Part shown: piece by piece, positions 225-62,481 of the stretch
Layout of the letters: every line of letters begins with the position of its first letter
Numbering within the stretch: position 1 is the stretch's first letter
Virus record (IMG/VR): IMGVR_UViG_3300034072_000758
Span: 186,001 to 250,000 of that record
Direction: 5' to 3' (one strand)
DNA: 64,000 nucleotides
The notes under the pieces: generated by a model
Told to the model about the DNA's origin: nothing
The model's input: the letters and a program-made list of their open reading frames with translations, nothing else
Database searches by the model: none
Made by a program: the position numbers and the translations under genes

Positions 225-530
225 TCATGCTGTCAGCGATAAGATCATCACCGCTTCCTCTTCGTCTGTGTTTATGTCAACGCGAGAAATAAACATCTTA
301 CCACTACCAAAATGAATGATCAATGTGGGTGTGGTGACTTTTATTATCTCATAATTACCTTTACCCTTTAAGCCAATAATGGTCGCAGTACAGAGATCGT
401 CGCCTATACGAAAATCGATAACTTCTCGTGTTTCTGGTGTCAGCATAATAAGTCCGTACCGTTCGCTCACGCGCCGAACAATTCCATTAGCAATAGGCCA
501 GTAAGCTGGGTTCGAGCGTTCAAGGATCAT
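225..530 (-). CDS. CT-motif family small protein (shared C-terminal acidic-hydrophobic helix)
   Basis: Ends INTDEEEAVMILSLTA; overlaps the upstream ORF. Confidence 0.8.
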   Translation of the reverse strand: MILERSNPAYWPIANGIVRRVSERYGLIMLTPETREVIDFRIGDDLCTATIIGLKGKGNYEIIKVTTPTLIIHFGSGKMFISRVDINTDEEEAVMILSLTA

Positions 531-885
531 GGCGAGTAATTACCGGCACAGCCTTATCGTCGGGCATATGAAGAGTGAATATCATCAGAGCTTCATCAAG
601 AGTATATTGCGAGTCACTAAAGTTCACTAAAAAATCGTTAGAAGATATTTCTTCCAGCAAAGAATACACCGAGATCGCTTCGCATTGTAACTCACGGAAA
701 CGAAGCTTGTTTTCCTTGATGGATACCCGCTCACAAACATAAATTATTTTATATTTACCAATGGTAAAATGAATTTGTGTGCCGGGATGCCAGCCCAATC
801 CAGTCAATGACAGATGGCTGATAGCGTTCGAAATGGTGTCGATGATTCGCGCACCAAGCTCTCTTGGGACTTCAATACCAATCAT
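520..885 (-). CDS. CT-motif family small protein
   Basis: SQYTLDEALMIFTLHMP near the C-terminus; start/stop overlap. Confidence 0.75.
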   Translation of the reverse strand: MIGIEVPRELGARIIDTISNAISHLSLTGLGWHPGTQIHFTIGKYKIIYVCERVSIKENKLRFRELQCEAISVYSLLEEISSNDFLVNFSDSQYTLDEALMIFTLHMPDDKAVPVITRHDP

Positions 886-1247
886 TCGACCACCATCAGT
901 ATAAGCATCATAGCATCATCCCCGTCATCATACGTGGGATGCCTCATTATAAAATATTCTGTAAAGGGGTCGATTCCAGCCGCTTTATTGATCACTCGTA
1001 TCAAGTGAATGTCACCATATTTTATTTCACGCAGAACCCAGCGACCGCGTATTGGTTCTTCTTTAAAGGGGTTATCATCTGGGAAAAATTGAAATGTCGA
1101 AATAAAACGTCCGGTTTCAAGCGTGACTTGCTGGCCATGTTCTTTCGAGCGCATCATGTCCATGCGCGCCTTACCCTCAATCGTAATGTTCTTCCGAACA
1201 TACGAAAGCACCATATCATGATATTCTTCTTCGATGTAGTAGGTCAT
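882..1247 (-). CDS. CT-motif family small protein
   Basis: Ends DDGDDAMMLILMVVE; ATGA overlaps. Confidence 0.8.
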   Translation of the reverse strand: MTYYIEEEYHDMVLSYVRKNITIEGKARMDMMRSKEHGQQVTLETGRFISTFQFFPDDNPFKEEPIRGRWVLREIKYGDIHLIRVINKAAGIDPFTEYFIMRHPTYDDGDDAMMLILMVVE

Positions 1248-1573
1248 TTATATTTCAAAAGGAATGTCGTAAACTCGGTATCAATTTCAGTGGTACGGTC
1301 TTTAGGGTTTCGATGACTCACCTTAACCGAACTGACCTTACTCTTATCCCACTCAAATTCGAAACGCAGGGCCTCATAGAGAACTTCTTTAATGAAACTA
1401 CCAACCGAAGTATTGATCATTGTGATTTCGATGTCGGGGTCAAAATATAGCGTCTCTTCCCCGCGATTCCACTTAGTAGCAACTTCGCTGTCATAATACA
1501 TTTTGTGGAAATAATTGTATATTTCTGCGCTCTTAGGCGAGTTATAACAAAGGGAAACGATAAACTCATTCAT
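1244..1573 (-). CDS. CT-motif family small protein
   Basis: Ends TTEIDTEFTTFLLKYK. Confidence 0.7.
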   Translation of the reverse strand: MNEFIVSLCYNSPKSAEIYNYFHKMYYDSEVATKWNRGEETLYFDPDIEITMINTSVGSFIKEVLYEALRFEFEWDKSKVSSVKVSHRNPKDRTTEIDTEFTTFLLKYK

Positions 1574-1905
1574 CGATAGTCACTCTCTATTTTATCACGC
1601 TTCGTCATTGGTTCTTTTTTCAAACTTACAGAGAAACCCAGATGTGGAAGAATGCTTGCGAAATTTCGGATGGTATCACCGTGAATGGTTACGCGACACT
1701 CATATTCCCCGGAGGCCAGCAAGGATGATGCCACCTTGGGAATAATAAAGGGGGGACATCCAAAACTAAACACCACACCAGCCGCATAGTCGGCCTGTTG
1801 CTTGGTTGGGTATCCTTCACCTATCCACTTAATGCGGATCGGAGTGCCATCTGGATAGCCGTAAGGTTTGGGTAAGCTTAACATGGTAAATTTCGTATCA
1901 CACAT
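1570..1905 (-). CDS. hypothetical protein
   Basis: First gene after the promoter at 1925-1952; ATGA-coupled to the next gene. Confidence 0.7.
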   Translation of the reverse strand: MCDTKFTMLSLPKPYGYPDGTPIRIKWIGEGYPTKQQADYAAGVVFSFGCPPFIIPKVASSLLASGEYECRVTIHGDTIRNFASILPHLGFSVSLKKEPMTKRDKIESDYR

Positions 1906-1924
1906 TTAAGCCATTTAGAAGCCC

Positions 1925-1952
1925 CTACAGCGATATAAATGAATTTAGTCAA
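1925..1952 (-). promoter_or_regulatory. sigma70-like early promoter
   Basis: TTGACT followed about 16 nt later by CTGTAG on the minus strand, upstream of 1905. Confidence 0.5.
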
Positions 1953-2024
1953 CACTTATCGATTATCTTATTAACGCCCGTCCTGAGCCTTGTCTGGGGC
2001 GTAATGACGTGATATGGAAGAGTT

Positions 2025-2396
2025 ATGCCAGACTTATCTTACGACACCATTACATCGTTGCTTGGAAGCGCACAAGGAATGCGCTGGAAGAACGGAGCGT
2101 ATCGCGGCAAGCTTACAAATGGACTCAAAGTCCTAGTGAATACTCTCAATGGTTTTGGCGCGGATACCTCAGCAATGACCTACCATATTACTGATGGGAG
2201 TGGAAGGATTCATATTTGGGGATGCGTCGATAACTATGAAGCAGACATCGAAGGCAAACGCATTTGCTTAGATGAAAAGCTACAGATCACCAAAACGGTT
2301 TTCGAAAGTCCGAAGTTTCAATGTATTGTTAGGTCTGACTTATCACCTGAAAAAACCGATGAGTTTCTGATGAGAGTGATCCTGACATGCGCATAG
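2025..2396 (+). CDS. CT-motif family small protein
   Basis: Ends SPEKTDEFLMRVILTCA. Confidence 0.8.
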   Translation: MPDLSYDTITSLLGSAQGMRWKNGAYRGKLTNGLKVLVNTLNGFGADTSAMTYHITDGSGRIHIWGCVDNYEADIEGKRICLDEKLQITKTVFESPKFQCIVRSDLSPEKTDEFLMRVILTCA

Positions 2397-2716
2397 CTTC
2401 TGATAAACTTCCGCCGATGGAGTTCTTCAAAAACCAAATCGACTACAACCGCGCCTCATTTATCAGGCACACAGACGGGAAGGCATTTGGTTTTTGGGTA
2501 AATGTCTGTGGAGACCACTATGATGTTTGGTGGAAGGAATGGGATCACAATACGGAAATGATGGTGGTAAAAGGTAAACACTTCACTATCACTTACAAAG
2601 CACGTCCCAAAATACGTAGTAAAGATTTGGAAACGCTCGCTGAACTTAAGGTGAAGTATTTCCACCAGAACCGCGCCGAAGACGCCATGACAAATCTTCT
2701 GGTAGCCAGCACTTAA
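2387..2716 (+). CDS. CT-motif family small protein
   Basis: Ends NRAEDAMTNLLVAST. Confidence 0.8.
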   Translation: MRIASDKLPPMEFFKNQIDYNRASFIRHTDGKAFGFWVNVCGDHYDVWWKEWDHNTEMMVVKGKHFTITYKARPKIRSKDLETLAELKVKYFHQNRAEDAMTNLLVAST

Positions 2717-2719
2717 TTG

Positions 2720-2748
2720 TTGACAGCATGTCAATATAGTGACATATC
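2720..2748 (+). promoter_or_regulatory. sigma70-like promoter containing inverted repeat TTGACA-gca-TGTCAA
   Basis: TTGACA 2720-2725, N17, CATATC 2743-2748; ATG 6 nt later. Confidence 0.55.
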
Positions 2749-2754
2749 AGGTTC

Positions 2755-3084
2755 ATGAAGTTTTTCAAAAACGATCACGAAAAGATTATGAGTATCTTGA
2801 ACGGACTTACGGCCAAGTACGAGCCGCAAGACGGTCATATCGTGATGAACGATAACTGGACCCTTTCAACGAAGACCTACGCGGACGGAACGGTCATTAT
2901 CTGGAAAAGACCAAAACCAAGCCGAAGACTCACATCATATACTCTAGCAATCCACCAAATTACGGTGGATGGTGTAAAGTTTCGCTTTGTCGGTAAAGCT
3001 GATCGTTTTCACTATATTGAAGGTCTGGGTCCGATGGTTAGTGATCGGATGATGGATTTGGTGTTATCCTCATGGTCCCAATAA
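2755..3084 (+). CDS. CT-motif family small protein
   Basis: Ends VSDRMMDLVLSSWSQ. Confidence 0.75.
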   Translation: MKFFKNDHEKIMSILNGLTAKYEPQDGHIVMNDNWTLSTKTYADGTVIIWKRPKPSRRLTSYTLAIHQITVDGVKFRFVGKADRFHYIEGLGPMVSDRMMDLVLSSWSQ

Positions 3085-3416
3085 GACCCTTCCTGAATTT
3101 TCTGGCTGCGATCCCCGAATGGAAGTCGGATGGAATCAATATCGGCTATTCGGATGACCGAGTGTATGCCAGCTTAAACTTTACGGCTGGTCTTATGGTG
3201 TTCACCATTAAAGACCGAAACATCGGCCTCGAATATCGAGGCGTATATGAAGGTCATCGTCTCTCCGGGTCTACCGAAACGCCAAGTGGGTCGGTCCTCC
3301 GTCTACGAGATCGACAGGCTTACTTAATAAGAGAAGATAGCCTTGACGACGAACGTATGCGTACCGAGGGTTCGAGCGAAGACGCCATCATGGCTTTTGT
3401 GTTGAAGTATAGCTGA
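3072..3416 (+). CDS. CT-motif family small protein
   Basis: Ends SSEDAIMAFVLKYS. Confidence 0.8.
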   Translation: MVPIRPFLNFLAAIPEWKSDGINIGYSDDRVYASLNFTAGLMVFTIKDRNIGLEYRGVYEGHRLSGSTETPSGSVLRLRDRQAYLIREDSLDDERMRTEGSSEDAIMAFVLKYS

Positions 3417-3964
3417 TGCGCGAACTTTCCAATAAAGAAATTGCGGCATACATTATCCATTGCGTCACCAGCGGCGTTTTGGTTGTTACCGATCTCAACG
3501 ACATGTTCAAGAAATCGTATCATCCCGAAGATGATCCAGAGCAATTCCTGTTGCTCATGGGTATTCGAGTCGCGCCACCCATCGCAAAACACTTCCCAGA
3601 GACGCCCGCAATCCGCGAGACATTCAATGAATCGACCATCGCGTTATTGAAACTAATGTGGGATCGTGACCAGAAATATTTAGACACACGGGATTTCTCA
3701 CAATGGTGGAATGTTCGAGCAAAGGTACTCGGCCTAATATTTGCGTGTGTGCTTGTTAAACATCTGATCGACCCCACAACCAAAGAAGCAATTGAAGAAT
3801 ATCTTTTGACTTTCGCCGCTCCTAAGAATACACTTAATAGCTATGCCACCCGCAAGTCGATAATGGAAGAGATTGATTCGGTTTGGGCTGACGACGATGA
3901 TTTCCGCGTCCGCTACAAGTTGGCTGCGCTGCCATTAGAAGATGATTATGACGACAACGACTAA
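3416..3964 (+). CDS. hypothetical helical protein with CT-motif-like tail
   Basis: TGATG coupling; DDDDFRVRYKLAAL near the C-terminus. Confidence 0.7.
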   Translation: MRELSNKEIAAYIIHCVTSGVLVVTDLNDMFKKSYHPEDDPEQFLLLMGIRVAPPIAKHFPETPAIRETFNESTIALLKLMWDRDQKYLDTRDFSQWWNVRAKVLGLIFACVLVKHLIDPTTKEAIEEYLLTFAAPKNTLNSYATRKSIMEEIDSVWADDDDFRVRYKLAALPLEDDYDDND

Positions 3965-4008
3965 ACTACTTTCCGACGAAGACCGATCAAATTTAAGCTC
4001 CTACACGC

Positions 4009-4416
4009 ATGAACGCCCCCTCATTTGAACAGTTGCTTGCGCTTTACAATCAACTTCGGGAAGATCAATCTTTCACGAGACATAAGCAGCATTGGTTGTT
4101 CAATGAAAAGGGTCATGTTCGATCCAATCTCGCGGGTATTCCTTTCAAGCTTTCGTATCACATCTGTAGACTGGATGCTTACAATACCGATGTGACATTC
4201 ATCCTTGAAAGCCGCGCTCTCAAAATCGTATATAAGGCCGAACAAACTATCCTCACAATCTTGGAGAAATACGACCTCGGTACAAAAGGCTATCCGGTCG
4301 TCGTGGGGAGCGCGGAATACATTCTCAGGCTTCACCATCACCACGTTCGTCTAAAGCGTCGAAACGAGGGTGAAGACGAACTAATGCGACTTATTTTGTC
4401 TTGGCCAGAGGCGTAA
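4009..4416 (+). CDS. CT-motif family small protein
   Basis: Ends EGEDELMRLILSWPEA. Confidence 0.8.
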   Translation: MNAPSFEQLLALYNQLREDQSFTRHKQHWLFNEKGHVRSNLAGIPFKLSYHICRLDAYNTDVTFILESRALKIVYKAEQTILTILEKYDLGTKGYPVVVGSAEYILRLHHHHVRLKRRNEGEDELMRLILSWPEA

Positions 4417-4417
4417 A

Positions 4418-4822
4418 ATGTTTTGGAATGTTTCTGATTTACGTCGCCCAGAAGTATCAAGAATGATGGATCGTATCAACGATCTCATGATGGGTCAGTC
4501 TGCGGTGAAATCGCATAACATATGGACTAGGATCGAGACCTTGCGCGTCGATCTAAGTTTCGGCACCAAAACGAAACTTAAGATCACCGCGTGGCACCTG
4601 TCGCCAATATCCAGCCGGGTACGAGTGGATATTATCGGCCAGAACTTCAAGCTACGCTATGAAGGCTACGATGACCCAATCCTTATTCAAAAAATCGCTA
4701 AGACCGATTTCTATGAGATCAAAATAAAATTCAAGCATACTGTACTGTTTATAGAAGATTTTCTTTGGCTTCGTGGAACAAAAGGCGAAGACGAATATAT
4801 GACGTTCTTGTTGTCTCTATGA
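4418..4822 (+). CDS. CT-motif family small protein
   Basis: Ends KGEDEYMTFLLSL. Confidence 0.8.
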   Translation: MFWNVSDLRRPEVSRMMDRINDLMMGQSAVKSHNIWTRIETLRVDLSFGTKTKLKITAWHLSPISSRVRVDIIGQNFKLRYEGYDDPILIQKIAKTDFYEIKIKFKHTVLFIEDFLWLRGTKGEDEYMTFLLSL

Positions 4823-5134
4823 TAGAGCCAGAAGAAGCATCATGACTGCCTCTTCATGATCGTTATAACCATGATTTTCATCTATAAAGTATTTTAGTTT
4901 TACCCTCTCGACCACGATGTCTTTATATTGAATCCGATCAAGCTCCCAAATATAATCTTCCTCGCCGGGAACGAACCACACCATTTCCCGTGAGGCGACT
5001 ATGTGTCCACCATCTATTTCTTTATAGAAACGACGCACACGATAGTCCAGATTGGGTAAATGTCGCAGTATTGCGGACTGAACCTGTATACCTAAGATGC
5101 TGGGAAGGAGGAGCATCAGACAGACATCAGCCAC
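4817..5134 (-). CDS. CT-motif family small protein
   Basis: Ends NDHEEAVMMLLLALS. Confidence 0.75.
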   Translation of the reverse strand: MADVCLMLLLPSILGIQVQSAILRHLPNLDYRVRRFYKEIDGGHIVASREMVWFVPGEEDYIWELDRIQYKDIVVERVKLKYFIDENHGYNDHEEAVMMLLLALS

Positions 5135-5730
5135 AAACCATCATGGGCGATGTTCGAATCAAACACGGCGAACTCGGTGTCGGGCTTACCCACTTCGAAC
5201 CGGCTACCCAGATCGGCGATCAAATCCGCACACTCATCCAAGAAATCTTCATAGGTTCCTGTCGTAGCCCGCTGAGTGACCATGATCACGAATTTACCAT
5301 TGTCGTATTGCTTGTTGAGGTTCTGAGACAGATGTGCGTAATTCCGCTTGGCGATCTCTTTGATGACCTCAAAATCGGCTTCGTCTGCCAAGACATTGAT
5401 GTGAGTCTCGAAATATTGCCCTGAGAACATCATGAGGCCGTTTTCAGCGCTGGGGGCGCTCTCATACCAAGGAACCGTCTCGATCTTCTCCCTGACCACT
5501 CTGAGGCCCGCTGCGGCCAATGTGTCGGCAATCTCCTTCATGCGAGCGACCACTTGGTTGTAATCGCATGTCATCTTGGAAGAAGTCATCAAGTCCAGCA
5601 TCTTGAGACGACCGGAGATATTGATCAATTCGAGCGGCTTCACCCCAAGAGAATTAGACACGCTCTTGAACACTTCCAAGTCACTATGCGGATCGACGGT
5701 TACGTGAATTTCAAAAGGGTAGTCGGTCAT
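5116..5730 (-). CDS. hypothetical protein with duplicated FExHxxV motif
   Basis: FEIHVTV and FETHINV in the two halves; ends DTEFAVFDSNIAHDGLWL; function unknown. Confidence 0.75.
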   Translation of the reverse strand: MTDYPFEIHVTVDPHSDLEVFKSVSNSLGVKPLELINISGRLKMLDLMTSSKMTCDYNQVVARMKEIADTLAAAGLRVVREKIETVPWYESAPSAENGLMMFSGQYFETHINVLADEADFEVIKEIAKRNYAHLSQNLNKQYDNGKFVIMVTQRATTGTYEDFLDECADLIADLGSRFEVGKPDTEFAVFDSNIAHDGLWLMSV

Positions 5731-6203
5731 GTGGAAAGCCTTAAGCGAATCATGAAGTCATCATATTTCTTTTGATCAGTGGTGAGATAATCAAAAGAAC
5801 TGTAGTTCTCGGCAACGTGAACGAAATGTTCATCGTTATGAACAACGACAGTCTCGTGAAAATCACAATACTCATCTTCGAAATCCGCCGCAAGAACCTT
5901 ATTACCAATCCACCCGTTTAACAGTCCGGGGATTTTGATACCCAAGACAAACGCGCCATAATAATTTGGTATAGTATTTTTGATACGATGATCGATATAG
6001 GCTAAGAAGTAAATCTTCTTGTTACCAAACGCCAGTCGTCTACGTTCAAACTTGGTGTAGGAACTCGACGGTATATTAAAGAGTTTCTTATGACATGCGC
6101 GCGCTGCCAGTCCGTCACTACTGTAAACTGTTCTAAAGTTGACCCGTTCAGCTTGTTCATAAAGCTTGAGCCAGAAGCGCATGTCTAATAATACATGGGT
6201 CAT
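5727..6203 (-). CDS. CT-motif family protein, DxKFW-type N-terminus
   Basis: Starts LLDMRFWLKLY; ends KKYDDFMIRLRLST. Confidence 0.8.
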   Translation of the reverse strand: MTHVLLDMRFWLKLYEQAERVNFRTVYSSDGLAARACHKKLFNIPSSSYTKFERRRLAFGNKKIYFLAYIDHRIKNTIPNYYGAFVLGIKIPGLLNGWIGNKVLAADFEDEYCDFHETVVVHNDEHFVHVAENYSSFDYLTTDQKKYDDFMIRLRLST

Positions 6204-6601
6204 GGTAAATCCAACATAAGTTTCATCAGAAAGTCGTCAGCGTCTTCTTCGCAACGGACGCGCATCTGAATGATGGTGGGGAGCTTGCCTTCTTGCGGTT
6301 CTTCATAATCAAATACAATACTGAACGTATCGCACTTGACCCACTCTGGATAGAAAATCCACTGGTCGCGGACTAACCGACGATGGCGGATGCGAACTTG
6401 AATAGTCTCGTAATGGTAAGACGGAAGCTCGTAAGAAATGTGGAATGGAGCCGCACTAGCCAATCCCGCATTGAGTTGATTTAAGTCGTCATCTATCTTG
6501 ATCGTTCGGGTTACTCCCGCGCGCACCGCCTCAATCGCCTCTTTATCCGAGACGATCTCCCCTTGGGGTTTTGTGAGTTTTTTCCGAAAAAGGTCTATCA
6601 A
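6200..6601 (-). CDS. CT-motif family small protein
   Basis: Ends EEDADDFLMKLMLDLP. Confidence 0.8.
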   Translation of the reverse strand: MIDLFRKKLTKPQGEIVSDKEAIEAVRAGVTRTIKIDDDLNQLNAGLASAAPFHISYELPSYHYETIQVRIRHRRLVRDQWIFYPEWVKCDTFSIVFDYEEPQEGKLPTIIQMRVRCEEDADDFLMKLMLDLP

Positions 6602-6918
6602 GATGTAGCCAGTACAATTCTCATGAGAAAGTCGTCAAAGTCCGCGCGGGTTGACTTACCATGATACATGAAAGACTTGAGCTTGGCACGAATATTTTTC
6701 GCATCGGTTGCGCCACAGACAGCAAAGTTTACCGATACCGATAAATCCATTTTGAAGATACCGGGGGCATGAAAGCTAACGGTATTTGAACGCGAGATAA
6801 TATTAAGAACGATACCGTTCTTTCTAACTACCCTACGTTCTAAATCTCTAATAGAATCAATCTGTTCAGACTTATGAAACAAGTCATACCAGAATTTAGG
6901 ATCGATCTCTTTTTTCAT
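6598..6918 (-). CDS. CT-motif family protein, DPKFW-type N-terminus
   Basis: Starts EIDPKFWYDLF; ends RADFDDFLMRIVLATS. Confidence 0.85.
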   Translation of the reverse strand: MKKEIDPKFWYDLFHKSEQIDSIRDLERRVVRKNGIVLNIISRSNTVSFHAPGIFKMDLSVSVNFAVCGATDAKNIRAKLKSFMYHGKSTRADFDDFLMRIVLATS

Positions 6919-6990
6919 AGGTCCAGAGCATATTTCAACATGTAGTCTTCAAACTTTTCGGTCGTCGCCATACAAATCGTCTGTAATCGA

Positions 6991-7338
6991 TCATTTGGCC
7001 ACCATCATAAGAAAAAGCATCAGATGCTTCTCAACATCAACCATCTTGGTTGGACCAATGAGTTTGATCGCAAACTTGTCCATCGAATCTGGTTGACCGT
7101 CCCGAACATAGAACGAGACCTTCATTTTCGTTGGGAAGTGGAAAACACGCTTCCCCGTCTTCTTGGAATGAAAAACGTTCACCCATTCCGTATTTTGTTT
7201 GAACTTTAAACGGATCAGCGATTTCGATTCTGGCACACCATTCGTATAGAACTGCCAACGACCAGCATATTGCGGTCTTGTTGTAGGACGCGAATTGTCA
7301 AACACCATCCGCCAGAATTTTGGGTCGTGTAAGATCAT
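6991..7338 (-). CDS. CT-motif family protein, DPKFW-type N-terminus
   Basis: Starts LHDPKFWRMVF; ends VEKHLMLFLMMVAK. Confidence 0.8.
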   Translation of the reverse strand: MILHDPKFWRMVFDNSRPTTRPQYAGRWQFYTNGVPESKSLIRLKFKQNTEWVNVFHSKKTGKRVFHFPTKMKVSFYVRDGQPDSMDKFAIKLIGPTKMVDVEKHLMLFLMMVAK

Positions 7339-27623: not shown

Positions 27624-27652
27624 ACAATAATTCACTATCGTCAGCAAGTCAA
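27624..27652 (-). promoter_or_regulatory. sigma70-like early promoter
   Basis: TTGACT-N17-TATTGT followed by a CAGGAGG RBS. Confidence 0.7.
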
Positions 27653-28337: not shown

Positions 28338-28354
28338 ACAATGTCTCTACCAGA

Positions 28355-49870: not shown

Positions 49871-50068
49871 CTAATCATCGTGCCTTAGTAAAACAGACAT
49901 GGCGTCATCATGTGTGATACGCTCACCTCGTAACGCTTTTTGTCGAACTCGTTCATAACGAGCATCACTACAGCGCCATAGCCTTGTCATATAATGAAAT
50001 GCGATTATAATACTAGCAATACTGGCCATAAGCAAAATGGCTAGGATGATTTTAATAAAAACAATCAT
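49871..50068 (-). CDS. small membrane protein
   Basis: N-terminal TM helix. Confidence 0.6.
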   Translation of the reverse strand: MIVFIKIILAILLMASIASIIIAFHYMTRLWRCSDARYERVRQKALRGERITHDDAMSVLLRHDD

Positions 50069-50595: not shown

Positions 50596-50900
50596 ATCAC
50601 TTGTAGATATATGGCCATCAGATAATTGTCCAGAGTTTCCTCAGACAATCCGGGGTAAGTCGCATATACAAAATCTAAGACACTCCCATTAGCATGGACG
50701 GACAAACCAATATGGAAAACCCCCGGCACCATAAAATCGTATCGGACGGAATTTGGGAAACTTGAAGTGGCTCCACAAATACCAATTTTCTTTGATTCTT
50801 CATTAACAACGAACGGATAATACACCAGATTGAAGCCGTTACCTTTGGACTTAAAAAGGTTTACCCATATTTCTGGTTTGAACTTGCTTTCGAAATTCAT
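50592..50900 (-). CDS. CT-motif family small protein
   Basis: FKPEIWVNLF; ends LSEETLDNYLMAIYLQVI. Confidence 0.85.
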   Translation of the reverse strand: MNFESKFKPEIWVNLFKSKGNGFNLVYYPFVVNEESKKIGICGATSSFPNSVRYDFMVPGVFHIGLSVHANGSVLDFVYATYPGLSEETLDNYLMAIYLQVI

Positions 50901-52299: not shown

Positions 52300-52689
52300 A
52301 TGATAAGTCGTGATTTTGTGTATTGGCTTCAAGGATTCTTCGAGATTTCAGAAGCCACAGGTGATGTCGATGCCGTCACCCTAACTGCCGCTCAAGCAGA
52401 CATGGTGCGTAAGCATCTGTCGCTGGTTGTGGAATATGAAACCAACCCCACCCTACCATTCGTTCAGTGGTTGATCGGTTTCATGGACGCCGCAAAAACC
52501 CCCGACAAGGCACAGGTCGAGACAATCCGAGCGAAGCTCAACGATGTTTTCAAGCATGTGATCGACCCGCCGATGGGCGATGCCAAGAAGCAAAAGAAGC
52601 TGAATGAAATTCATTCGCCGCATCCATTCCAAGGCCCACAAAAGGGTCAGATCGATACCAATCCGGGGGATTTTGTAGTACGCTGCTGA
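52300..52689 (+). CDS. hypothetical phage protein with an internal duplication
   Basis: FVYWLQGFFE / FVQWLIGFMD; CAGGAG RBS. Confidence 0.8.
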   Translation: MISRDFVYWLQGFFEISEATGDVDAVTLTAAQADMVRKHLSLVVEYETNPTLPFVQWLIGFMDAAKTPDKAQVETIRAKLNDVFKHVIDPPMGDAKKQKKLNEIHSPHPFQGPQKGQIDTNPGDFVVRC

Positions 52690-53048
52690 TGATTGTTCCT
52701 GTCGAAATGATTGTTAAGGCGCTTCTCACTTTGAAGCCGTATATACAGGTGGCGGATTTTCCGCCGCCGAATATGCGTTTTAATAATGCTGGCTTACTGG
52801 AAATCGATCCGACTTGTACTACTATGCGAACAGAGTTAGGTAAGATAGAGGTCGGGTTACGCTATAGTAGCGTCCAAAGCTTTTGGTTCATAGAAGAGAT
52901 AATCTTTTCTGACTATCGTATAAAGCAATCATCGCCATCCCATCATTTTTCTGGTACGGATTTTGTTATTGAATGTGAAACGGGTGAACCCGATCTCGAA
53001 GAAGCATTCTTAAAACTGTATCTTCTATTACCAGCATTGGAACAATAA
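52689..53048 (+). CDS. CT-motif family small protein
   Basis: Ends GEPDLEEAFLKLYLLLPALEQ. Confidence 0.8.
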   Translation: MIVPVEMIVKALLTLKPYIQVADFPPPNMRFNNAGLLEIDPTCTTMRTELGKIEVGLRYSSVQSFWFIEEIIFSDYRIKQSSPSHHFSGTDFVIECETGEPDLEEAFLKLYLLLPALEQ

Positions 53049-53607: not shown

Positions 53608-54660
53608 ATGCTCGTAGAACTCAGCCCTGAGCTTAAAGAAGCTCCCATTCGCCAGTCTAGCTTTCACGGCTTGACCAATGATCTGAAACACGCCCTTGGT
53701 GTGAATTACAACGCTTCGATCCATGTTCTCCATACACCTTCGGAAGAAGGCGTAATGTCGGTGTCCGAAGGTTTCCTCAACATCATGAGCAAATCATATT
53801 CGTCGCATTATGCGCTGCGCATTTCTCCGCACGATGTCTGGTTTATCGTTCTGACCGAGATCGCCGCCCTGATCAACAAGAACGCAGAAGCCTGTCGCTC
53901 ACTCTTCACCAAGTCGGCGGAAAATATCGTCATCGCTGTCGAAACGAATGACATCACCAAGATCGATCTGAACAAAGTCGAAGCCCAGCTTCGTGAACTG
54001 GTTCCGGTGGACATCGATCAATTTCTGCCTGAGTTTTCAACCATCACCCCAGCGGCTCGCTACGCCTGTCTCGCAGCCTTCTGTGACGGCGTGAGCCAAT
54101 ACTACAGCTACATGACCTTCTGCTGCGGCCTCAAGGCCATCCACATCGACGGTACGGTCAATGATTGGGCTTTGCTCAACGAACGGGCCGAAGACATGGC
54201 AGTCCTGTTCCAAGGCGTTGGTATCGACATCACGGAATGGATGGGTCGCGTCCAAGCCGTCGCCCTGCGCTTCATTAAGGCGCTCAACGGTGATTCTACT
54301 GATATGATCGACATCTTCTCACAAAAGAATGTCGGTTCCGGTGGTCAGAAAGAAATCAGCGGATGGTTCAAAGACATCTTCCAAAAGCCAGCTTCGCAAC
54401 TCGACCATTTCCCGAATGCTTGGGCGAAGGTCACGTACAAGAACATTGAAACCCAGATGGAGTTTACCGGCATCCACGGTTGCTTCCTGATGAAGCAAGA
54501 CGAAGCTGGGACGGTCTATGGTGATTACGGCGAGATCGTGTGCTACGCTGAACAACTCTCCGACGAAGACCTCAAAGGGTTGGAGTGGAACGAGCGTCAC
54601 CGCAAGACAGGCTTGCTTCAAGGCTACACCCCTGCCCCTGCGCCGGACGACAACGTATAA
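53608..54660 (+). CDS. DUF4419-family protein
   Basis: SYSSHYALRISPHDVWF..FSTIT..MTFCCGLKAIHIDGTVNDW. Confidence 0.75.
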   Translation: MLVELSPELKEAPIRQSSFHGLTNDLKHALGVNYNASIHVLHTPSEEGVMSVSEGFLNIMSKSYSSHYALRISPHDVWFIVLTEIAALINKNAEACRSLFTKSAENIVIAVETNDITKIDLNKVEAQLRELVPVDIDQFLPEFSTITPAARYACLAAFCDGVSQYYSYMTFCCGLKAIHIDGTVNDWALLNERAEDMAVLFQGVGIDITEWMGRVQAVALRFIKALNGDSTDMIDIFSQKNVGSGGQKEISGWFKDIFQKPASQLDHFPNAWAKVTYKNIETQMEFTGIHGCFLMKQDEAGTVYGDYGEIVCYAEQLSDEDLKGLEWNERHRKTGLLQGYTPAPAPDDNV

Positions 54661-55013
54661 TGCTCGAAGGAGTCGAAATATCCGCGCGATTTGCTACCCT
54701 TCTTGATCGTCATTTTCAAGAACGGGATCGGGCAGGGGAAGACCTTCCGTATTGGTCGATCCCCTTGAAGTTCGGATGTTTCGACTTCACCATTGAATAT
54801 TTTCGAAACGAGGGTCGTTTCTATCTCGATAGAGCAACGGACGGCGATCTGATTATCTATTTCGATTATGCTCACGGAATAAATCATCCGATCTATAAAC
54901 AGGTTCCCGACGAAAAGGAACTGATGGTCACGTGCCGTTTCTATACGGATGACAACGACGAAATACTGATCAAGATGGCTTTGGGGATGAGTGAGACTCC
55001 TATGTTCGCCTAA
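54660..55013 (+). CDS. CT-motif family small protein
   Basis: Start moved to MLEGVEI (TAATG overlap); DDNDEILIKMALGM near the end. Confidence 0.75.
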   Translation: MLEGVEISARFATLLDRHFQERDRAGEDLPYWSIPLKFGCFDFTIEYFRNEGRFYLDRATDGDLIIYFDYAHGINHPIYKQVPDEKELMVTCRFYTDDNDEILIKMALGMSETPMFA

Positions 55014-55016: not shown

Positions 55017-55020
55017 GGGT

Positions 55021-55368: not shown

Positions 55369-55621
55369 GATATTCTTTCAAATCATCGGGGAACTTTGTT
55401 ACCGGGCATTCCATGTCCTTCCCCATAACATATATACCGTCTACTTTGTAAGCATAACCCACGAAACCGTCACCTTCGACCGACGCTAAAGCTGAGTAAT
55501 CATTATATTTCCAATAATAGGAAACCTCGTTCTCGGCCACGTTCGGGCTAATGTGTGGGCGCAACTTCAATCCCCGCATCGTGCGTTCGAACAAAAAAGC
55601 ATCCATTTCAACCGGGGTCAT
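55349..55621 (-). CDS. hypothetical protein
   Basis: ATGA-coupled ORF. Confidence 0.7.
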   Translation of the reverse strand: MTPVEMDAFLFERTMRGLKLRPHISPNVAENEVSYYWKYNDYSALASVEGDGFVGYAYKVDGIYVMGKDMECPVTKFPDDLKEYLSKIPY

Positions 55622-55959
55622 CTTGCCTTACCTTCGGCTATCAAGGTGGCAATCATCAAGAACTCTTCCAATGACCCCGGTTCTTGCAAAGGACTTTCCG
55701 GGTTAGACCATCTTTGATCGAGGATAGTATATGTAGGATTCGGATTGGTGGTTTCAAAGATACGCATGCATACCTTCAAATGTAGATTACGATCACAAAA
55801 GAAATCCACGACATTATCTTCGATTCTTTGCCCCATACTTTGACAAAAGAATTTGATTAACCATTCATGTCCGGCGTATTCAAGAGTGAAATCCGCATTT
55901 ATAGATGCGAGCTTCCAATATCGTTGAAAGATGCCATTTAACAAATCTGGATTTATCAT
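55618..55959 (-). CDS. CT-motif family small protein
   Basis: Ends PGSLEEFLMIATLIAEGKAR. Confidence 0.8.
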   Translation of the reverse strand: MINPDLLNGIFQRYWKLASINADFTLEYAGHEWLIKFFCQSMGQRIEDNVVDFFCDRNLHLKVCMRIFETTNPNPTYTILDQRWSNPESPLQEPGSLEEFLMIATLIAEGKAR

Positions 55960-56426
55960 TGGAGTAATGCCAGTTTAAATATATAGTCTTCGGCTTTTTC
56001 TTGATCATATATAGCGTAAATATTATTATTGCCGCCCGCCGCCCGTATATCTTCGTTGAAGTGCGTGTGATCATAATCGTCATGTCTCAAAATAAATTTG
56101 TCCTCGGTCGATATTCTGTTTTTCAATCTGAATATGCGTATATGTAAAGCAAATATACCGGGTACATAGAAGCTAAGTCCGGTTCCGCTACCTTTTTCTG
56201 GACAAGAGATATAGGACACTCGTATCCTTAACGCTTTCAAAGGATCATCTTCGTTCTCTATTACAAAATGAAGTTCGGCTCCGCGTCCATACTTATCTCC
56301 CCCGGTACGATGGGAAAATTTGGCGCTTTTAACCAATCGCATCCAGAACATCGCATCATGGAAAATAGGAAGGGTCATATTGACAGCTTGACAACATATG
56401 GATTTATGGTAGATTGATCCTATCAC
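55956..56426 (-). CDS. CT-motif family protein, DxxFW N-terminus
   Basis: FHDAMFWMRLVKSA; ends YDQEKAEDYIFKLALLQ. Confidence 0.8.
   Translation of the reverse strand: MIGSIYHKSICCQAVNMTLPIFHDAMFWMRLVKSAKFSHRTGGDKYGRGAELHFVIENEDDPLKALRIRVSYISCPEKGSGTGLSFYVPGIFALHIRIFRLKNRISTEDKFILRHDDYDHTHFNEDIRAAGGNNNIYAIYDQEKAEDYIFKLALLQ
56388..56415 (+). promoter_or_regulatory. sigma70-like early promoter
   Basis: TTGACA-N16-TAGATT, with a second TTGACA 8 nt upstream. Confidence 0.65.
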
Positions 56427-57765: not shown

Positions 57766-58107
57766 GTGGAGGCTCTGGAAGGCGATATGAGCTATACCTA
57801 TCCAACTCTCAAGCGCATGTTCGAGCTATATACTGACAATAAGGCTGGTTTAGCTTACCAACGCCTTAGTCCAAACATTCACATCTTGCGTTTGATAACT
57901 GATGATTTCTTGCTGACCTATACCGGTCACTACTTCAATAATGTCAAGATGATGGTCACTGCCGAATGTGTTATTCAGCGGGCGGAATGTATACACATCG
58001 ATAACGAACAGATTTATCTTTTTTACGATCCGCCAACCTTCCGAGTGCTCACTACCCAAGAAGAAGCTGAACACACTCTTGTAGAATGGATTATGAAGAA
58101 CCTATGA
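57766..58107 (+). CDS. CT-motif family small protein
   Basis: PTLKRMFELY; ends TTQEEAEHTLVEWIMKNL. Confidence 0.8.
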   Translation: MEALEGDMSYTYPTLKRMFELYTDNKAGLAYQRLSPNIHILRLITDDFLLTYTGHYFNNVKMMVTAECVIQRAECIHIDNEQIYLFYDPPTFRVLTTQEEAEHTLVEWIMKNL

Positions 58108-58472
58108 CTATGAGACCCGAAGACTATCTGGCGAACAAGTGTAATCTTCCCACCATACAAAAAATGTTCGAGCTATACGCTACAGACAAGCGCATGTTTG
58201 ACTTCGAGCATCATGGGGATGATGACAGTGGGTTTTTCAAATTGGTGTTCTCTGTCAATGGAACGTGTTCTCTGATCTATACGGCTCACAGAATCCGTCT
58301 GATCCAGTATATGCAATCCGTATTCGGTAAGAAAACCGAAGGGGTTTCTATAGTAATCGGTAAAAACGTTCATTACGTTTTTCCAGCGCCGCCAAAAATA
58401 GAAATAGATTCTCTTCACACTATCGAACAGGCCGAAGAAGCACTAATGCTTTGGTTATTGACCCTCAACTAG
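58086..58472 (+). CDS. CT-motif family protein, tandem paralogue of 57766-58107
   Basis: PTIQKMFELY; ends HTIEQAEEALMLWLLTLN. Confidence 0.85.
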   Translation: MDYEEPMTMRPEDYLANKCNLPTIQKMFELYATDKRMFDFEHHGDDDSGFFKLVFSVNGTCSLIYTAHRIRLIQYMQSVFGKKTEGVSIVIGKNVHYVFPAPPKIEIDSLHTIEQAEEALMLWLLTLN

Positions 58473-58827
58473 ATTGAAGGGTTAATAACATGATTTCTTC
58501 GTCTATTTTTTCCCGGTCGGCGTCATCTAAGTAAGTGATATAAACCAAGACTTCTTTTTCCAAATCTTGTTTGAAAAAATATTCATTGTTTTTACCAACA
58601 AATAAGCAACAATGCTCAATATACTTAAGAGTATTAGTATTCTTTAGTCTGGCCATGTAGTGTTGATTATCGGACAGTCTTGGGATTTTATATAGTAGAG
58701 TATAGCCATTACCCATATATATCATTCGTACAACTTTTTCATCTATGGTGGGTTCATATATTCGACTATTTTTATTCGCCATAACCCAAGCGACAGACGG
58801 ATACCCTTTGATACGCTTCTTCATCAA
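58465..58827 (-). CDS. CT-motif family small protein
   Basis: Ends DREKIDEEIMLLTLQSS. Confidence 0.85.
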   Translation of the reverse strand: MMKKRIKGYPSVAWVMANKNSRIYEPTIDEKVVRMIYMGNGYTLLYKIPRLSDNQHYMARLKNTNTLKYIEHCCLFVGKNNEYFFKQDLEKEVLVYITYLDDADREKIDEEIMLLTLQSS

Positions 58828-60110: not shown

Positions 60111-60132
60111 ATCACGCTCCTGATGAATAAGT

Positions 60133-60196
60133 AACCTACAGTCTCATTGAGGTTATGTCAATTAAAATTGATTAAGAATGTTCTTTATAGTATTGT
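60133..60196. promoter_or_regulatory. divergent sigma70-like promoter pair
   Basis: Minus strand TTGACA-N17-TAGGTT; plus strand TTGATT-N17-TATTGT, with ATG 5 nt later. Confidence 0.65.
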
Positions 60197-60201
60197 TAAG
60201 C

Positions 60202-60717
60202 ATGATTACTAAAAAACGCATGAGTGAAATGTATGAATTGAACCGAACACTGGCTACGTCAATAATGTTCGGTGTTAATGATTTAGAAGATTACTTAGAA
60301 AAGACCGAATTGAGCCTCGAAGCTCAACTATCTATTGTCACTTTCGAGCTTCAATATGTAACGAATTTAAAAAACGTTCATGAAGATGTATTGCGTTATG
60401 TAAACTATGCTTTCCAACGCATGTGTAAAGATGACGTTAAAGCCGGAAATATTAAAAATATTTGGGACTGCGCCTGTTCAATGTTTTGTTACACGGGCAA
60501 CTTTATGGAGGTTCTTTATCCAGATACGCAAAAAATATTACGGGATCACCTCATGAATAATATTGAGCATTTTAAGGAAGAGGAAAAGGCATATACAAAT
60601 AGCTTCGGTACAGTGGGCCTCGATCCCAGCCGCAAATCGGTGATACAAAAAATAGCGAACAATATCTTCGACAATGATGAAGATCGTGTCAAATTCGTGT
60701 TGCTGGTTTCTTCTTAA
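60202..60717 (+). CDS. helical protein with CT-motif tail
   Basis: LSLEAQLSIV..LKNVHEDV repeat-like segment; ends DNDEDRVKFVLLVSS; start moved to MITKK. Confidence 0.7.
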   Translation: MITKKRMSEMYELNRTLATSIMFGVNDLEDYLEKTELSLEAQLSIVTFELQYVTNLKNVHEDVLRYVNYAFQRMCKDDVKAGNIKNIWDCACSMFCYTGNFMEVLYPDTQKILRDHLMNNIEHFKEEEKAYTNSFGTVGLDPSRKSVIQKIANNIFDNDEDRVKFVLLVSS

Positions 60718-61421: not shown

Positions 61422-61426
61422 AAGCG

Positions 61427-61434
61427 TATTTATT
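61427..61434 (-). promoter_or_regulatory. T4-type late promoter
   Basis: AATAAATA-cgctt-ATG. Confidence 0.65.
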
Positions 61435-61756
61435 TACAGGTGTTGGGAACCTGTTCGGTGTTGGTCCCGCTGCCCGATACCATTGAGAGATATTGACAGT
61501 TGGTCACATTGTCAGTAGTCAGGTAAACCACAAAGGGTCCATTGCCGGTTAGTTGCTTCACGGTGACCCGCGTTGTTTCCTGCGATGTGAATACGGCATC
61601 GGCCATAACTTCGGTCTTTTCTTCCGCCGTCATTTCGCGGGCGGGTTCTTCGATGCGTTTACACCCAACCAGCACTGTGCCAACCGCTACCAAAATAGCG
61701 ATTACTGGAAGCGAATGTATCACGCCGATCAGAACGTTTTCTTGAAGCTTGGACAT
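61430..61756 (-). CDS. putative lipoprotein
   Basis: LVGC lipobox; C-term TDNVTNCQY...VPNTCK. Confidence 0.7.
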   Translation of the reverse strand: MSKLQENVLIGVIHSLPVIAILVAVGTVLVGCKRIEEPAREMTAEEKTEVMADAVFTSQETTRVTVKQLTGNGPFVVYLTTDNVTNCQYLSMVSGSGTNTEQVPNTCK

Positions 61757-61761
61757 GCGCG

Positions 61762-62049
61762 TTACTCCTTACAAGTGCCGGGAACAGGCTGGGACGTGAT
61801 GCCTTCTCCCCGCACGAAAAGATAGGTCTGGCAACCGTTGGTCTTATCGGTGGAGATAAAGGCGCGGATTGTGAAACCGTCCTCATACTCGCCGATTTGT
61901 GCGATGACGGCTCGATTGCTGACCGGGGTGGATGCCGCTTCGGCGACGGCGACGTTCCCAACACGGGCCGAGTGAACTGGTGCTTCGGCGGGCTTCGAAC
62001 AACCGATTAGACCGATAGCGAGAATGAGTAGTGCGGTGGTACGAAACAT
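61762..62049 (-). CDS. putative lipoprotein, paralogue of 61430-61756
   Basis: LIGC lipobox; TDKTNGCQTY...VPGTCKE. Confidence 0.8.
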   Translation of the reverse strand: MFRTTALLILAIGLIGCSKPAEAPVHSARVGNVAVAEAASTPVSNRAVIAQIGEYEDGFTIRAFISTDKTNGCQTYLFVRGEGITSQPVPGTCKE

Positions 62050-62068
62050 GATGTGGTCTCCTTTTAAA

Positions 62069-62098
62069 TTGACTGTTCAGTAACAAAGCAAGTATCGT
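62069..62098 (+). promoter_or_regulatory. sigma70-like promoter, probably giving a leaderless mRNA
   Basis: TTGACT-N18-TATCGT; ATG 5 nt later. Confidence 0.6.
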
Positions 62099-62103
62099 GC
62101 CGT

Positions 62104-62481
62104 ATGGAAACTTTTACGCTTGACCTTCTTATCAAACTTATAACGAATGCTCCGAAGAAGTATCGCCGTTCACAACACAATGCTTACACGGCGGAGTTTG
62201 TTTGCGGGACAAAAATTTCCTTTGAGTACAAAGCAAGCTTAAAGTACATGGACTTTCGTTGCTACAAAGCGAGATCATTCAGTATACGTGGTTCCGTGAG
62301 CGCCAACACTAACCCACCACATTCAAATTATTCACAGTCTTTGAGCTTGGTTGGCTACCGCACATTTCCACTTACCCTACATTTTAGACCCTCTTCGTAT
62401 TACTGTCACCTGATCGTCAATGGCAATCAAGAGAAATCCGAAGAAGACTTAGTTAAGTTCCTGTTGGTCAACTGTGGGTAG
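62104..62481 (+). CDS. CT-motif family small protein
   Basis: Ends NQEKSEEDLVKFLLVNCG. Confidence 0.8.
   Translation: METFTLDLLIKLITNAPKKYRRSQHNAYTAEFVCGTKISFEYKASLKYMDFRCYKARSFSIRGSVSANTNPPHSNYSQSLSLVGYRTFPLTLHFRPSSYYCHLIVNGNQEKSEEDLVKFLLVNCG

What the first reader, a model, noticed from the sequence alone, without database searches (positions are those of the whole stretch)
225..62481. About 55-60 divergent small proteins share one C-terminal acidic-hydrophobic helix: candidate phage adaptor/targeting library
Seen: roughly a third to a half of the real genes end in [S/T]-x-[DE]-[DE]-x-[DE]-[DE]-x-[LIMF]-[MLT]-x-[LIF]-x-L, followed by usually 1-5 residues and the stop. Examples: SPEKTDEFLMRVILTCA (2396), RADFDDFLMRIVLATS (6598), DLDEEMMLLTLSII (12951), PEAIDEYLMRLVLITS (25496), ITDDEFEQLLTLLVLELS (28744), LTQEEVDELATVMLLLYS (33572), LSEETLDNYLMAIYLQVI (50592), EKIDEEIMLLTLQSS (58465). 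The upstream 80-160 aa are beta-rich and mostly not alignable by eye, and members lie on both strands in many separate operons. Established analogy: poxvirus ankyrin/PRANC (F-box-like) and SOCS-box proteins pair a variable binding domain with a constant C-terminal helix that docks on one hub. Inference: variable N-terminal sensors or inhibitors of host defence or metabolic proteins use one shared tail, either to dock on a common partner (a host Clp/Lon-type protease or chaperone, a phage hub, a membrane or the capsid) or to hetero-oligomerise. I know of no named family for this tail.
Basis: partly seen in the sequence, partly recalled or inferred. Interest (0 to 1): 0.95.

Follow-up and report, generated by a model that had tools for sequence, protein, structure and literature searches.

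The report
Huge-phage family with conserved end helices
An uncultured 517-kb phage carries some 60-90 fast-diverging copies of one small protein type whose two end helices stay constant while the beta-rich middle varies; this is most likely a home-grown library of binders, not unrelated proteins sharing a bolt-on tail, and its function is unknown.

Summary
A 12-residue C-terminal motif (h-[DE]-[DE]-x-[LMI]-[MTI]-x-h-h-L-x-x, then 0-2 residues and the stop) scores above 10 bits in 37 of about 127 window genes and above 4 bits in 50. Shuffled proteins give about 0.35 per 125 at 10 bits, and T4, two other large phages and the contig's own downstream flank give none. The family runs on upstream of the window: 57 strict and 87 relaxed copies in about 97 kb of a 516,805-bp metagenomic phage contig.

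Codons at conserved positions differ, so the constraint is on the protein. No Pfam, PHROG, PDB, BFVD or database relative was found outside this contig.

The tail is not an isolated module. The N-terminal 20 residues are as conserved as the tail, a Trp-containing N-terminal helix co-occurs with the tail (p=5e-7), and strict members are 84-214 residues long and beta-periodic in the middle. The better AlphaFold model (pLDDT 72) gives helix, four-strand meander, short strand, helix.

My best reading is one tandemly amplified alpha-beta-alpha family with a constant helical scaffold and a hypervariable face. A docking or targeting role for the tail is not excluded, because the distance to the stop is fixed and the last residues are enriched in small amino acids. 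Function is inferred only.

The parts
225..1573 (-). Array of four members: 225-530, 520-885, 882-1247, 1244-1573
   Evidence: Tail scores 15.1, 23.1, 11.5 and 7.5 bits. The last two were hidden by a shadow ORF in my first gene set and were recovered from the JGI calls.
2025..5134 (.). Eight consecutive ORFs. Seven are on the plus strand (2025-2396, 2387-2716, 2755-3084, 3072-3416, 3416-3964 weak, 4009-4416, 4418-4822), followed by convergent 4817-5134 on the minus strand.
   Evidence: Scores 14.6-24.1 bits. The exception is 3416-3964 (5.5 bits, helical, motif not terminal), a doubtful member.
5727..7338 (-). 5727-6203, 6200-6601 and 6598-6918 (strict), plus 6991-7338 (degenerate tail, Trp N-helix)
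   Evidence: 18.3, 20.3 and 22.4 bits, with 4-nt start/stop overlaps. 6598-6918 was the target of the first AlphaFold run.
12951..13346 (-). Single member, the highest-scoring tail in the window
   Evidence: 24.5 bits. It lies just downstream of the 284- and 292-aa paralogues 11225-12951, whose ends are only faintly tail-like.
18104..18938 (-). Pair 18104-18481 and 18474-18938, both with the Trp N-helix
   Evidence: 16.6 and 20.8 bits; N-helix.
19707..20695 (-). 19707-20153 (strict) and 20150-20695 (weak tail, Trp N-helix)
   Evidence: 15.7 and 4.8 bits.
23409..25499 (-). 23409-23840, 23837-24337, 24334-24729 and 24722-25111; 25104-25499 is a possible degenerate copy
   Evidence: 17.8, 11.4, 18.1 and 6.5 bits. 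24334 and 24722 align over their whole length by BLASTP (E=7e-7).
25496..26600 (-). Three members: 25496-25900, 25900-26277, 26274-26600
   Evidence: 20.9, 18.1 and 19.5 bits. A database search with the first found only itself.
27641..29109 (-). 27641-28009 (weak tail, Trp helix), 28002-28337, 28355-28747, 28744-29109
   Evidence: 2.6, 20.8, 17.9 and 15.4 bits. 28744-29109 was the target of the better AlphaFold model.
31405..32453 (+). Two long members of 178 and 171 aa
   Evidence: 14.6 and 15.7 bits; no Pfam domain in the longer bodies.
32794..33904 (+). 32794-33195 (possible), 33189-33572 (strict), 33569-33904 (weak)
   Evidence: 2.8, 13.7 and 5.5 bits.
40620..42173 (-). 40620-41102, 41099-41476 (by eye), 41473-41856, 41853-42173
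   Evidence: 7.5, 2.4, 17.2 and 4.9 bits. All four aligned end to end in A1.
45766..46796 (+). Pair of the 'G-[DN]-x-x-x-F-E-x-D' subfamily; 45766-46275 has an N-terminal hydrophobic segment
   Evidence: 15.2 and 17.5 bits. The conserved block extends about 55 residues upstream of the stop in this subfamily.
48564..49550 (.). Convergent weak members 48564-49019 (+) and 49002-49550 (-)
   Evidence: 5.3 and 4.4 bits. 49002-49550 aligns with 28744-29109 over 114-129 residues (E=5e-5) and has the Trp helix at residue 54.
49871..50068 (-). 65-aa ORF with a membrane-like N-terminus and a tail-like end; doubtful
   Evidence: 7.5 bits, a level at which roughly 0.5-1.5 chance hits are expected per 125 ORFs.
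50592..50900 (-). Single strict member with the Trp N-helix
   Evidence: 16.2 bits; nearest paralogue is 6598-6918.
52689..53048 (+). Member with five residues after the motif
   Evidence: 15.3 bits.
54660..55013 (+). Member seen only after adopting the JGI start
   Evidence: 8.0 bits.
55618..56426 (-). 55618-55959 (strict) and 55956-56426 (weaker tail, Trp helix)
   Evidence: 20.5 and 6.5 bits.
57766..58827 (.). 57766-58107 (+, by eye), 58086-58472 (+) and convergent 58465-58827 (-)
   Evidence: -2.7, 24.2 and 23.3 bits. 57766 and 58086 are full-length paralogues (E=4e-6).
60178..60717 (+). 179-aa helical-looking protein with a tail-like end; doubtful
   Evidence: 5.0 bits.
62104..62481 (+). 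Possible last member at the right-hand edge of the family
   Evidence: 1.9 bits, but it aligns end to end in A1 (40 bits as a training row). Nothing tail-like in the next 9 kb.

Best explanation
This is one lineage-specific, tandemly amplified family of small cytoplasmic proteins in an uncultured 517-kb phage. In the roughly 111 kb surveyed, about 57 copies have a strong tail (84-214 aa, median about 130) and up to about 87 have a tail of any strength.

Each copy is a single alpha-beta-alpha domain: an N-terminal amphipathic helix, an antiparallel beta-meander of variable length, and a C-terminal helix of 16-17 residues. That last helix is the 'tail'. Its acidic start reads as a helix N-cap, and its L/M/h/h/L positions form a hydrophobic arc covering about two thirds of the helix.

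Inferred: the two end helices form the constant scaffold, while the strands and loops between them, which change in sequence and length from copy to copy, form the specificity surface. Duplication followed by fast divergence then gives the phage a repertoire of binders, probably aimed at host proteins (takeover or counter-defence).

Shown: the motif, its enrichment, the two conserved ends, the copy number, the arrangement in arrays, and the predicted topology. Inferred: burial of the tail, the binder role and the targets.
For: Motif enrichment.

Protein-level, not DNA-level, constraint: the conserved Leu uses TTG, CTT, CTG and TTA, and the acidic pair uses all four codons.

Both ends are conserved. 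In the 75-sequence alignment A2, target residues 1-20 carry 1.05 bits per column and residues 101-121 carry 1.10, against 0.31-0.49 in between. The Trp N-helix (W-x-x-h-h within the first 45 residues) is present in 30 of 62 tail-bearing ORFs and 9 of 83 others (Fisher p=5e-7). Most of those 9 have degenerate tails.

Shared architecture. With tails removed, held-out members score higher than non-member ORFs against a profile of the other members (p=1e-7 to 1e-9). Both Trp-type and non-Trp members show beta periodicity in the middle; non-members do not (p=4e-5 and 1e-3).

Where full-length pairwise similarity is detectable, it is usually between adjacent genes.

AlphaFold2 with A2: pLDDT 72.1, pTM 0.56; H2-16, E31-38, E41-48, E53-60, E64-71, E97-100, H106-120. 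The first, poorer model had the same order of elements.

In the G-[DN]-x-x-x-F-E-x-D subfamily the conserved block runs through two strands before the helix. A 259-aa copy keeps both the FW helix and the tail around a long insert.

Strong tails never sit on a protein with a recognisable other domain.
Against: Profile-profile comparison of tail-less bodies between subgroups finds nothing. A cross-validated N-terminal motif fails. Homology of all bodies is therefore not demonstrated, and the cross-validation signal could come from a few close pairs.

Both AlphaFold targets are Trp-type members; no non-Trp member was folded. The tool gives no coordinates, so packing of the tail against the sheet and the N-helix is assumed, not seen.

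The tail is conserved in identity (Met in about half, Leu in over 90%, acidic pair in about 90%), and equally so whether or not the Trp helix is present.

The invariant Leu is 2-4 residues from the stop in 47 of 57 copies. The last two residues are S/A/T in 46-47% of copies against 18% of controls. A purely structural helix does not obviously require these features.

There is no evidence on expression, partners or function.
Confidence: 0.55

Rival explanations
1. The tail is a shared C-terminal signal read by one hub. Variable bodies are delivered to, or regulated by, a common partner: a Clp/Lon-type protease or adaptor, a chaperone, a phage assembly or the capsid interior.
For: The tail is by far the best-conserved segment, with specific residues kept across bodies of about 10% identity. 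Conservation is independent of the N-helix type. The distance to the free C-terminus is fixed and the final two residues are enriched in small amino acids. Bodies are not detectably homologous by hhalign. A few tail-like ends sit on atypical proteins: 49871-50068, 60178-60717, and the 284- and 292-aa pair at 11225-12951.
Against: The atypical carriers all score in the range expected by chance. The N-terminus is equally conserved and linked to the tail. There is no flexible linker before the tail: it follows a strand and a capping box directly. The hydrophobic arc is too wide for a free soluble peptide. The model places the tail inside a compact domain at pLDDT about 80. No candidate hub was identified.
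Confidence: 0.25
2. The end helices are oligomerisation elements. Members form homo- or hetero-oligomers through a helical bundle, giving combinatorial assemblies.
For: There are two amphipathic helices at the two chain ends with a broad hydrophobic face. Many co-encoded paralogues have interchangeable helices. Weak, non-significant fold matches to p32/gC1qBP-type oligomeric alpha-beta-alpha proteins recur.
Against: The fold matches are far from significant (best E=0.24, TM 0.34 or lower). The monomer model is already compact (pTM 0.56).
Confidence: 0.15
3. The pattern is not a protein feature at all. It would be chance, a repeated DNA element at gene ends, or a by-product of ribosome-binding sites of overlapping downstream genes.
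For: Sixteen of 36 strict window members overlap the next start by 4 nt.
Against: Enrichment is about 100-fold over shuffles, and controls give none. Codons are diverse at conserved positions. The acidic pair lies 36-39 nt before the stop, too far for a Shine-Dalgarno effect. Members without a downstream gene keep the tail.
Confidence: 0.01

Closest known systems
Lineage-specific expansions of small domains in jumbo phages, e.g. the roughly 35-copy zinc-ribbon family of Bacillus phage G (Iyer et al. 2021, PMC7824862, read)
   Same: Many paralogues of one small domain within a single very large phage genome, with no assigned function; conflict or regulatory roles have been proposed.
   Different: This is a different, unannotated fold class. 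The copy number is higher (57 strict, up to about 87). Conservation is confined to the two chain ends, with a hypervariable middle of variable length.
Poxvirus ankyrin/PRANC (F-box-like) and SOCS-box adaptor families
   Same: As a working analogy: a variable recognition part plus a constant C-terminal helical element, in many copies per viral genome.
   Different: Those boxes are multi-helix modules of about 40-50 residues that bind Skp1 or Elongin B/C, and they sit on repeat domains. Here there is a single helix of 16-17 residues within a domain of about 120 residues, no box signature in Pfam, and the host is a bacterium without cullin-RING ligases.
C-terminal cargo-loading peptides of encapsulin cargo, and the N-terminal capsid-targeting sequence of T4 internal proteins (from general knowledge)
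   Same: A short conserved terminal peptide on otherwise diverse proteins that directs them into an HK97-type shell. T4 also packages an ADP-ribosyltransferase, and two ADP-ribosyltransferases lie in this region.
   Different: Encapsulin peptides follow a flexible linker and are not amphipathic core-like helices. The T4 signal is N-terminal and is cleaved. The ART-PolyVal proteins here lack the tail. No virion data exist.
Arrays of immunity proteins of polymorphic toxin systems (SUKH, Imm families; Zhang et al. 2012, PMC3482391, listed but not read)
   Same: Tandem arrays of small, fast-diverging alpha+beta proteins that act as specific binders or inhibitors.
   Different: No sequence match to any such Pfam family. 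Fold matches to the immunity proteins 7zhm_C and 4qlp_A are insignificant. No toxin partners are encoded beside them.
ssrA-type C-terminal degrons read by ClpXP or Tsp (from general knowledge)
   Same: A hydrophobic residue followed by small residues at the free C-terminus; position relative to the carboxylate matters.
   Different: The last three residues are only loosely constrained. The conserved part is a helix further upstream. No degradation data exist.

Membership tests
Lineage-specific paralogue expansion in a jumbo phage | Many copies of one protein type in one genome, largely in tandem arrays | tested here: met
   57 strict and 87 relaxed copies among 221 ORFs surveyed. Runs of up to 8. 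Detectable closest pairs are mostly adjacent.
Lineage-specific paralogue expansion in a jumbo phage | Copies are homologous over the whole domain | tested here: inconclusive
   Both ends are conserved, there is a weak cross-validated body signal and a shared beta periodicity. But hhalign between subgroups is negative and only two members were folded.
PRANC / F-box-like / SOCS-box adaptors | Multi-helix box of about 40-50 residues matching the family profile | tested here: not met
   No Pfam hit at E<=0.01 for any of 75 members and none at E<=1 for the 20 members scanned at that threshold. The conserved element is one helix of 16-17 residues.
PRANC / F-box-like / SOCS-box adaptors | Box binds a shared hub (Skp1, Elongin B/C) | not testable with these tools
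   No complex prediction or interaction data were available. Bacterial hosts lack these hubs (general knowledge).
Encapsulin-type cargo-loading peptide or capsid-targeting signal | Terminal peptide separated from the folded cargo by a flexible linker | tested here: not met
   The tail is preceded directly by a strand and an S/T/D-x-E-x cap, not by Gly/Pro/Ser-rich linker sequence.
Encapsulin-type cargo-loading peptide or capsid-targeting signal | Carriers are found inside the particle | not testable with these tools
   The genome is metagenomic only, so there is no virion proteome.
Polymorphic-toxin immunity families (SUKH / Imm) | Match to the family profiles or fold | tested here: not met
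   No Pfam match. Foldseek against PDB has no hit at E<=0.001.
ssrA-like C-terminal degron | Conserved non-polar tripeptide at the free carboxyl end | tested here: inconclusive
   The last two residues are S/A/T in 46-47% of members against 18% of controls, and Leu is usually at -3 or -4 (residues counted back from the C-terminus), but there is no fixed tripeptide.
Any described protein family | Significant sequence or structure match | tested here: not met
   Pfam and PHROGs for 75 members. PDB sequence profile, best E=2. Foldseek against PDB and BFVD, best E 0.24 and 0.13.

The most novel reading that the evidence does not exclude
The conserved C-terminal helix, possibly together with the N-terminal helix, is a docking surface for one hub. 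The hub could be a host or phage protease or unfoldase, or the capsid interior. The phage would then encode 60-90 interchangeable adaptors, each bringing a different host target to the same machine: a bacterial-virus counterpart of the F-box/PRANC or SOCS-box strategy, arrived at with an unrelated fold.
Probability: 0.2. Interest if true: 0.85.

Novelty: new variant of a known kind. Interest (0 to 1): 0.6.

Why it matters
Paralogue expansions in very large phages are known, but their purpose is not. This one is unusually large: 57 strict copies, against about 35 in the phage G zinc-ribbon family that Iyer et al. called unprecedented. It also has a clear design, with constant ends and a variable middle, which makes a simple hypothesis testable: a phage-made repertoire of binders on one scaffold. 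If the constant helices turn out to dock on a hub, it would be a new adaptor system. If they are only structural, the family is still a natural small scaffold that tolerates inserts of roughly 60 to 200 residues. Either way the family is absent from Pfam and PHROGs and would merit a new entry.

Tried and rejected
**Similarity within the family**
- Pairwise BLASTP and phmmer of whole proteins and of tail-less bodies gave only small clusters.
- A cross-validated PSSM for the N-terminal motif was not significant. The Trp helix is a subfamily trait.
- hhalign of tail-less bodies, Trp group against non-Trp group and in random halves, gave no signal.

**Known families and structures**
- Pfam and PHROGs on members gave nothing.
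- A PDB sequence profile gave nothing.
- Foldseek of both models against PDB and BFVD gave no hit at E<=0.001.

**Relatives elsewhere**
- Megablast and tblastn against GenBank phages found no relative of the region.
- The methyltransferase at 47002-47856 is 52% identical to those of Mimasvirus XbC2 and Erwinia phage Kaldavass, but 41 kb of XbC2 has no tails.
- An exhaustive HMMER profile search of 1.84 billion representatives returned only its own training sequences plus one spurious repeat protein. It also missed the same-genome paralogues upstream, so its silence is weak evidence.
- Word-indexed searches with one member, a 782-aa neighbour and a subfamily profile found only this contig.
- Pattern scans of IMG/VR (two tail subtypes), JGI metagenomes and GTDB genomes also found only this contig.

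**Other rejected ideas**
- The Logan contig SRR10854512_3123 is identical to the JGI contig over the compared stretches, so it offers no strain variation for dN/dS.
- A DNA repeat or a Shine-Dalgarno artefact is rejected.
- DNA-mimic-like acidity is rejected: member pI is mixed, median 6.4.
- The promoter and terminator scan was uninformative.

Full report
**Source.** The window is positions 186,001-250,000 of a 516,805-bp JGI metagenome contig (3300034072, Ga0310127_000012; IMG/VR UViG 3300034072_000758). A Logan assembly contig is identical over the stretches compared. The window has no near relative in GenBank phages. It encodes a glutamyl-tRNA synthetase, Tpt1/KptA, two ART-PolyVal ADP-ribosyltransferases, an EcoRV-like nuclease, an HD protein, an M23 peptidase, a tRNA-Leu and a short Portal_T4-like fragment. 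More tRNA synthetases, NADAR, NUDIX and PTH2 lie nearby. It looks like the accessory arm of a very large phage.

I refined a 12-column PSSM from them on the last 26 residues of a greedy non-overlapping ORF set.
- It converged on h-[DE]-[DE]-x-[LMI]-[MTI]-x-h-h-L-x-x.
- 36 of 125 ORFs scored above 10 bits.
- Controls at 10 bits: 0.35 per 125 for shuffled proteins, 1 of 218 shadow ORFs, 2 of 1121 internal windows, and no N-termini.
- With gene calls corrected against JGI's, the window has 37 strict and 13 weaker members among 127 genes. They lie on both strands in 22 runs of one to eight genes.
- Outside controls are clean: T4 (0 of 86), a 735-kb uncultured phage (0 of 46), Xanthomonas phage XbC2 (0 of 60), and the contig's own next 9 kb downstream (0 of 17).
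- Conserved positions use many different codons, so this is selection on the protein and not a DNA repeat.

**Extent.** Walking upstream with exact-protein look-ups shows the family continuing to about record position 151 kb. It stops at about 248 kb on the other side. Among 221 ORFs in the surveyed 147.7-259 kb stretch, 57 are strict and 87 are relaxed members. The rest of the contig was not surveyed.

**What the tail looks like.** Four residues before the motif there is usually S, T, D or N, followed by acidic residues. This is the pattern of a helix N-cap. Hydrophobic residues occupy motif positions 0, 3, 4, 5, 7, 8 and 9, and polar ones 2, 6 and 10. On a helical wheel that is a hydrophobic arc of roughly two thirds of the circumference (my inference). 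The near-invariant Leu lies 2-4 residues from the stop in 47 of 57 strict members. The last two residues are S/A/T in 46-47% of members against 18% of non-members.

**Is it a bolt-on tail or part of a domain?** Several results point to a domain.
- In the 75-sequence alignment A2, the first 20 residues of the target are as conserved (1.05 bits per column) as the last 21 (1.10). The middle carries 0.31-0.49 bits and is full of insertions and deletions.
- About half the members share an N-terminal helix containing Trp (for example x-F-W-x-x-L-h). It is present in 30 of 62 tail-bearing ORFs and 9 of 83 others (p=5e-7), and most of those nine have decayed tails.
- Strict tails occur only on proteins of 84-214 residues (median about 130) and never on a protein with a recognisable other domain.
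- Members of both subgroups show beta-type hydrophobic periodicity in the middle and helical periodicity at the ends; non-members do not.
- With tails removed, held-out members still score above non-members against a profile of the others.
- In one subfamily the conserved block extends about 55 residues back through two strands and a G-[DN] turn. Its N-terminal parts vary widely in length, giving proteins of 98 to 259 residues.
- Where full-length similarity is detectable, the partners are usually neighbours, as expected for tandem duplication.

**Structure prediction.** The 43-sequence alignment gave a poor model (pLDDT 57) with the order helix, strands, helix. The 75-sequence alignment, with 28744-29109 as target, gave pLDDT 72.1 and pTM 0.56. 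Its elements are H2-16, four strands of eight residues (31-71), a poorly defined stretch, E97-100 and H106-120; the helices are at about 78-84. Foldseek found nothing significant in PDB or BFVD. The recurring weak matches to p32/gC1qBP, frataxin and small immunity proteins share only the general alpha-beta-alpha layout. The tool returns no coordinates, so I could not measure burial of the tail. Both targets are Trp-type members.

**What argues the other way.** Profile-profile comparison of tail-less bodies is blank, and a cross-validated N-terminal motif fails outside the Trp subgroup. The tail keeps specific residues (Met, Leu, the acidic pair) just as well in members without the Trp helix. 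The fixed distance to the stop and the small terminal residues are not obviously needed by a structural helix.

**Relatives.** None were found outside this contig by any route: Pfam, PHROGs, PDB sequence profile, exhaustive HMMER, word-indexed searches, and pattern scans of IMG/VR, JGI metagenomes and GTDB genomes. There is one caveat. The exhaustive search did not recover even the upstream paralogues of the same genome, so very divergent relatives elsewhere would have been missed.

**Verdict.** The most likely reading (0.55) is a new, very large, tandemly amplified family with a constant two-helix scaffold and a hypervariable beta face. Its probable role as a repertoire of binders for host proteins is inferred from design and setting only. 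It remains the most interesting possibility that is still open.

Noticed in passing
window 20976-22646 (-), 51660-51742 (-); also L006:6019-7734, L007:10650-11882, L012:6514-7929: The phage encodes at least four aminoacyl-tRNA synthetases within about 110 kb: GluRS in the window, and ArgRS, a class-II enzyme and a class-I Ile/Val/Leu/Met-type enzyme outside it. It also encodes a tRNA-Leu(CAA).
   Followed up: partly
window 33888-34826 (-) and 36225-36839 (-): Two ART-PolyVal ADP-ribosyltransferase paralogues whose N-termini are 39% identical. Between them lies an EcoRV-like nuclease (35456-36181). Neither carries the tail.
   Followed up: partly
window 29926-30675 (-): A 249-aa ORF matches only 42 positions of the T4 portal (gp20) profile. 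It may be a remnant or a domain fragment, far from any structural module seen here.
   Followed up: no
window 11225-12079 (-), 12073-12951 (-), 42272-43378 (+): Three larger paralogues share an N-terminal domain (phrog_5925 / phrog_17056, function unknown). The first two end in faintly tail-like helices that score at chance level.
   Followed up: partly
window 28744-29109 (-); 24722-25225 (-); 864-1316 (+): Gene-call issues. The JGI 103-aa call for 28744-29109 removes the conserved N-terminal helix, and the TTG start at 29109 fits the family. The longest-ORF rule over-extends 24722-25225. It also yields a shadow ORF at 864-1316 that hides two real members on the other strand.
   Followed up: yes
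window 47002-47856 (+): A SAM-dependent methyltransferase-like protein is 52% identical to those of Xanthomonas phage XbC2 (Mimasvirus) and Erwinia phage Kaldavass. This is the only hint of kinship with cultured jumbo phages.
   Followed up: partly
window 61430-61756 (-) and 61762-62049 (-); 37536-39596 (-) and 39618-40277 (+): Further small paralogue sets unrelated to the tail family: two adjacent proteins of about 100 aa ending in a Cys-containing motif, and a 219-aa protein resembling the C-terminal part of the 686-aa protein.
   Followed up: no
window 45766-46275 (+); L007:18935-19486; L012:8535-9179: Some members of the G-[DN]-x-x-x-F-E-x-D subfamily begin with a hydrophobic, membrane-like segment, so part of the family may be membrane-anchored.
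   Followed up: no
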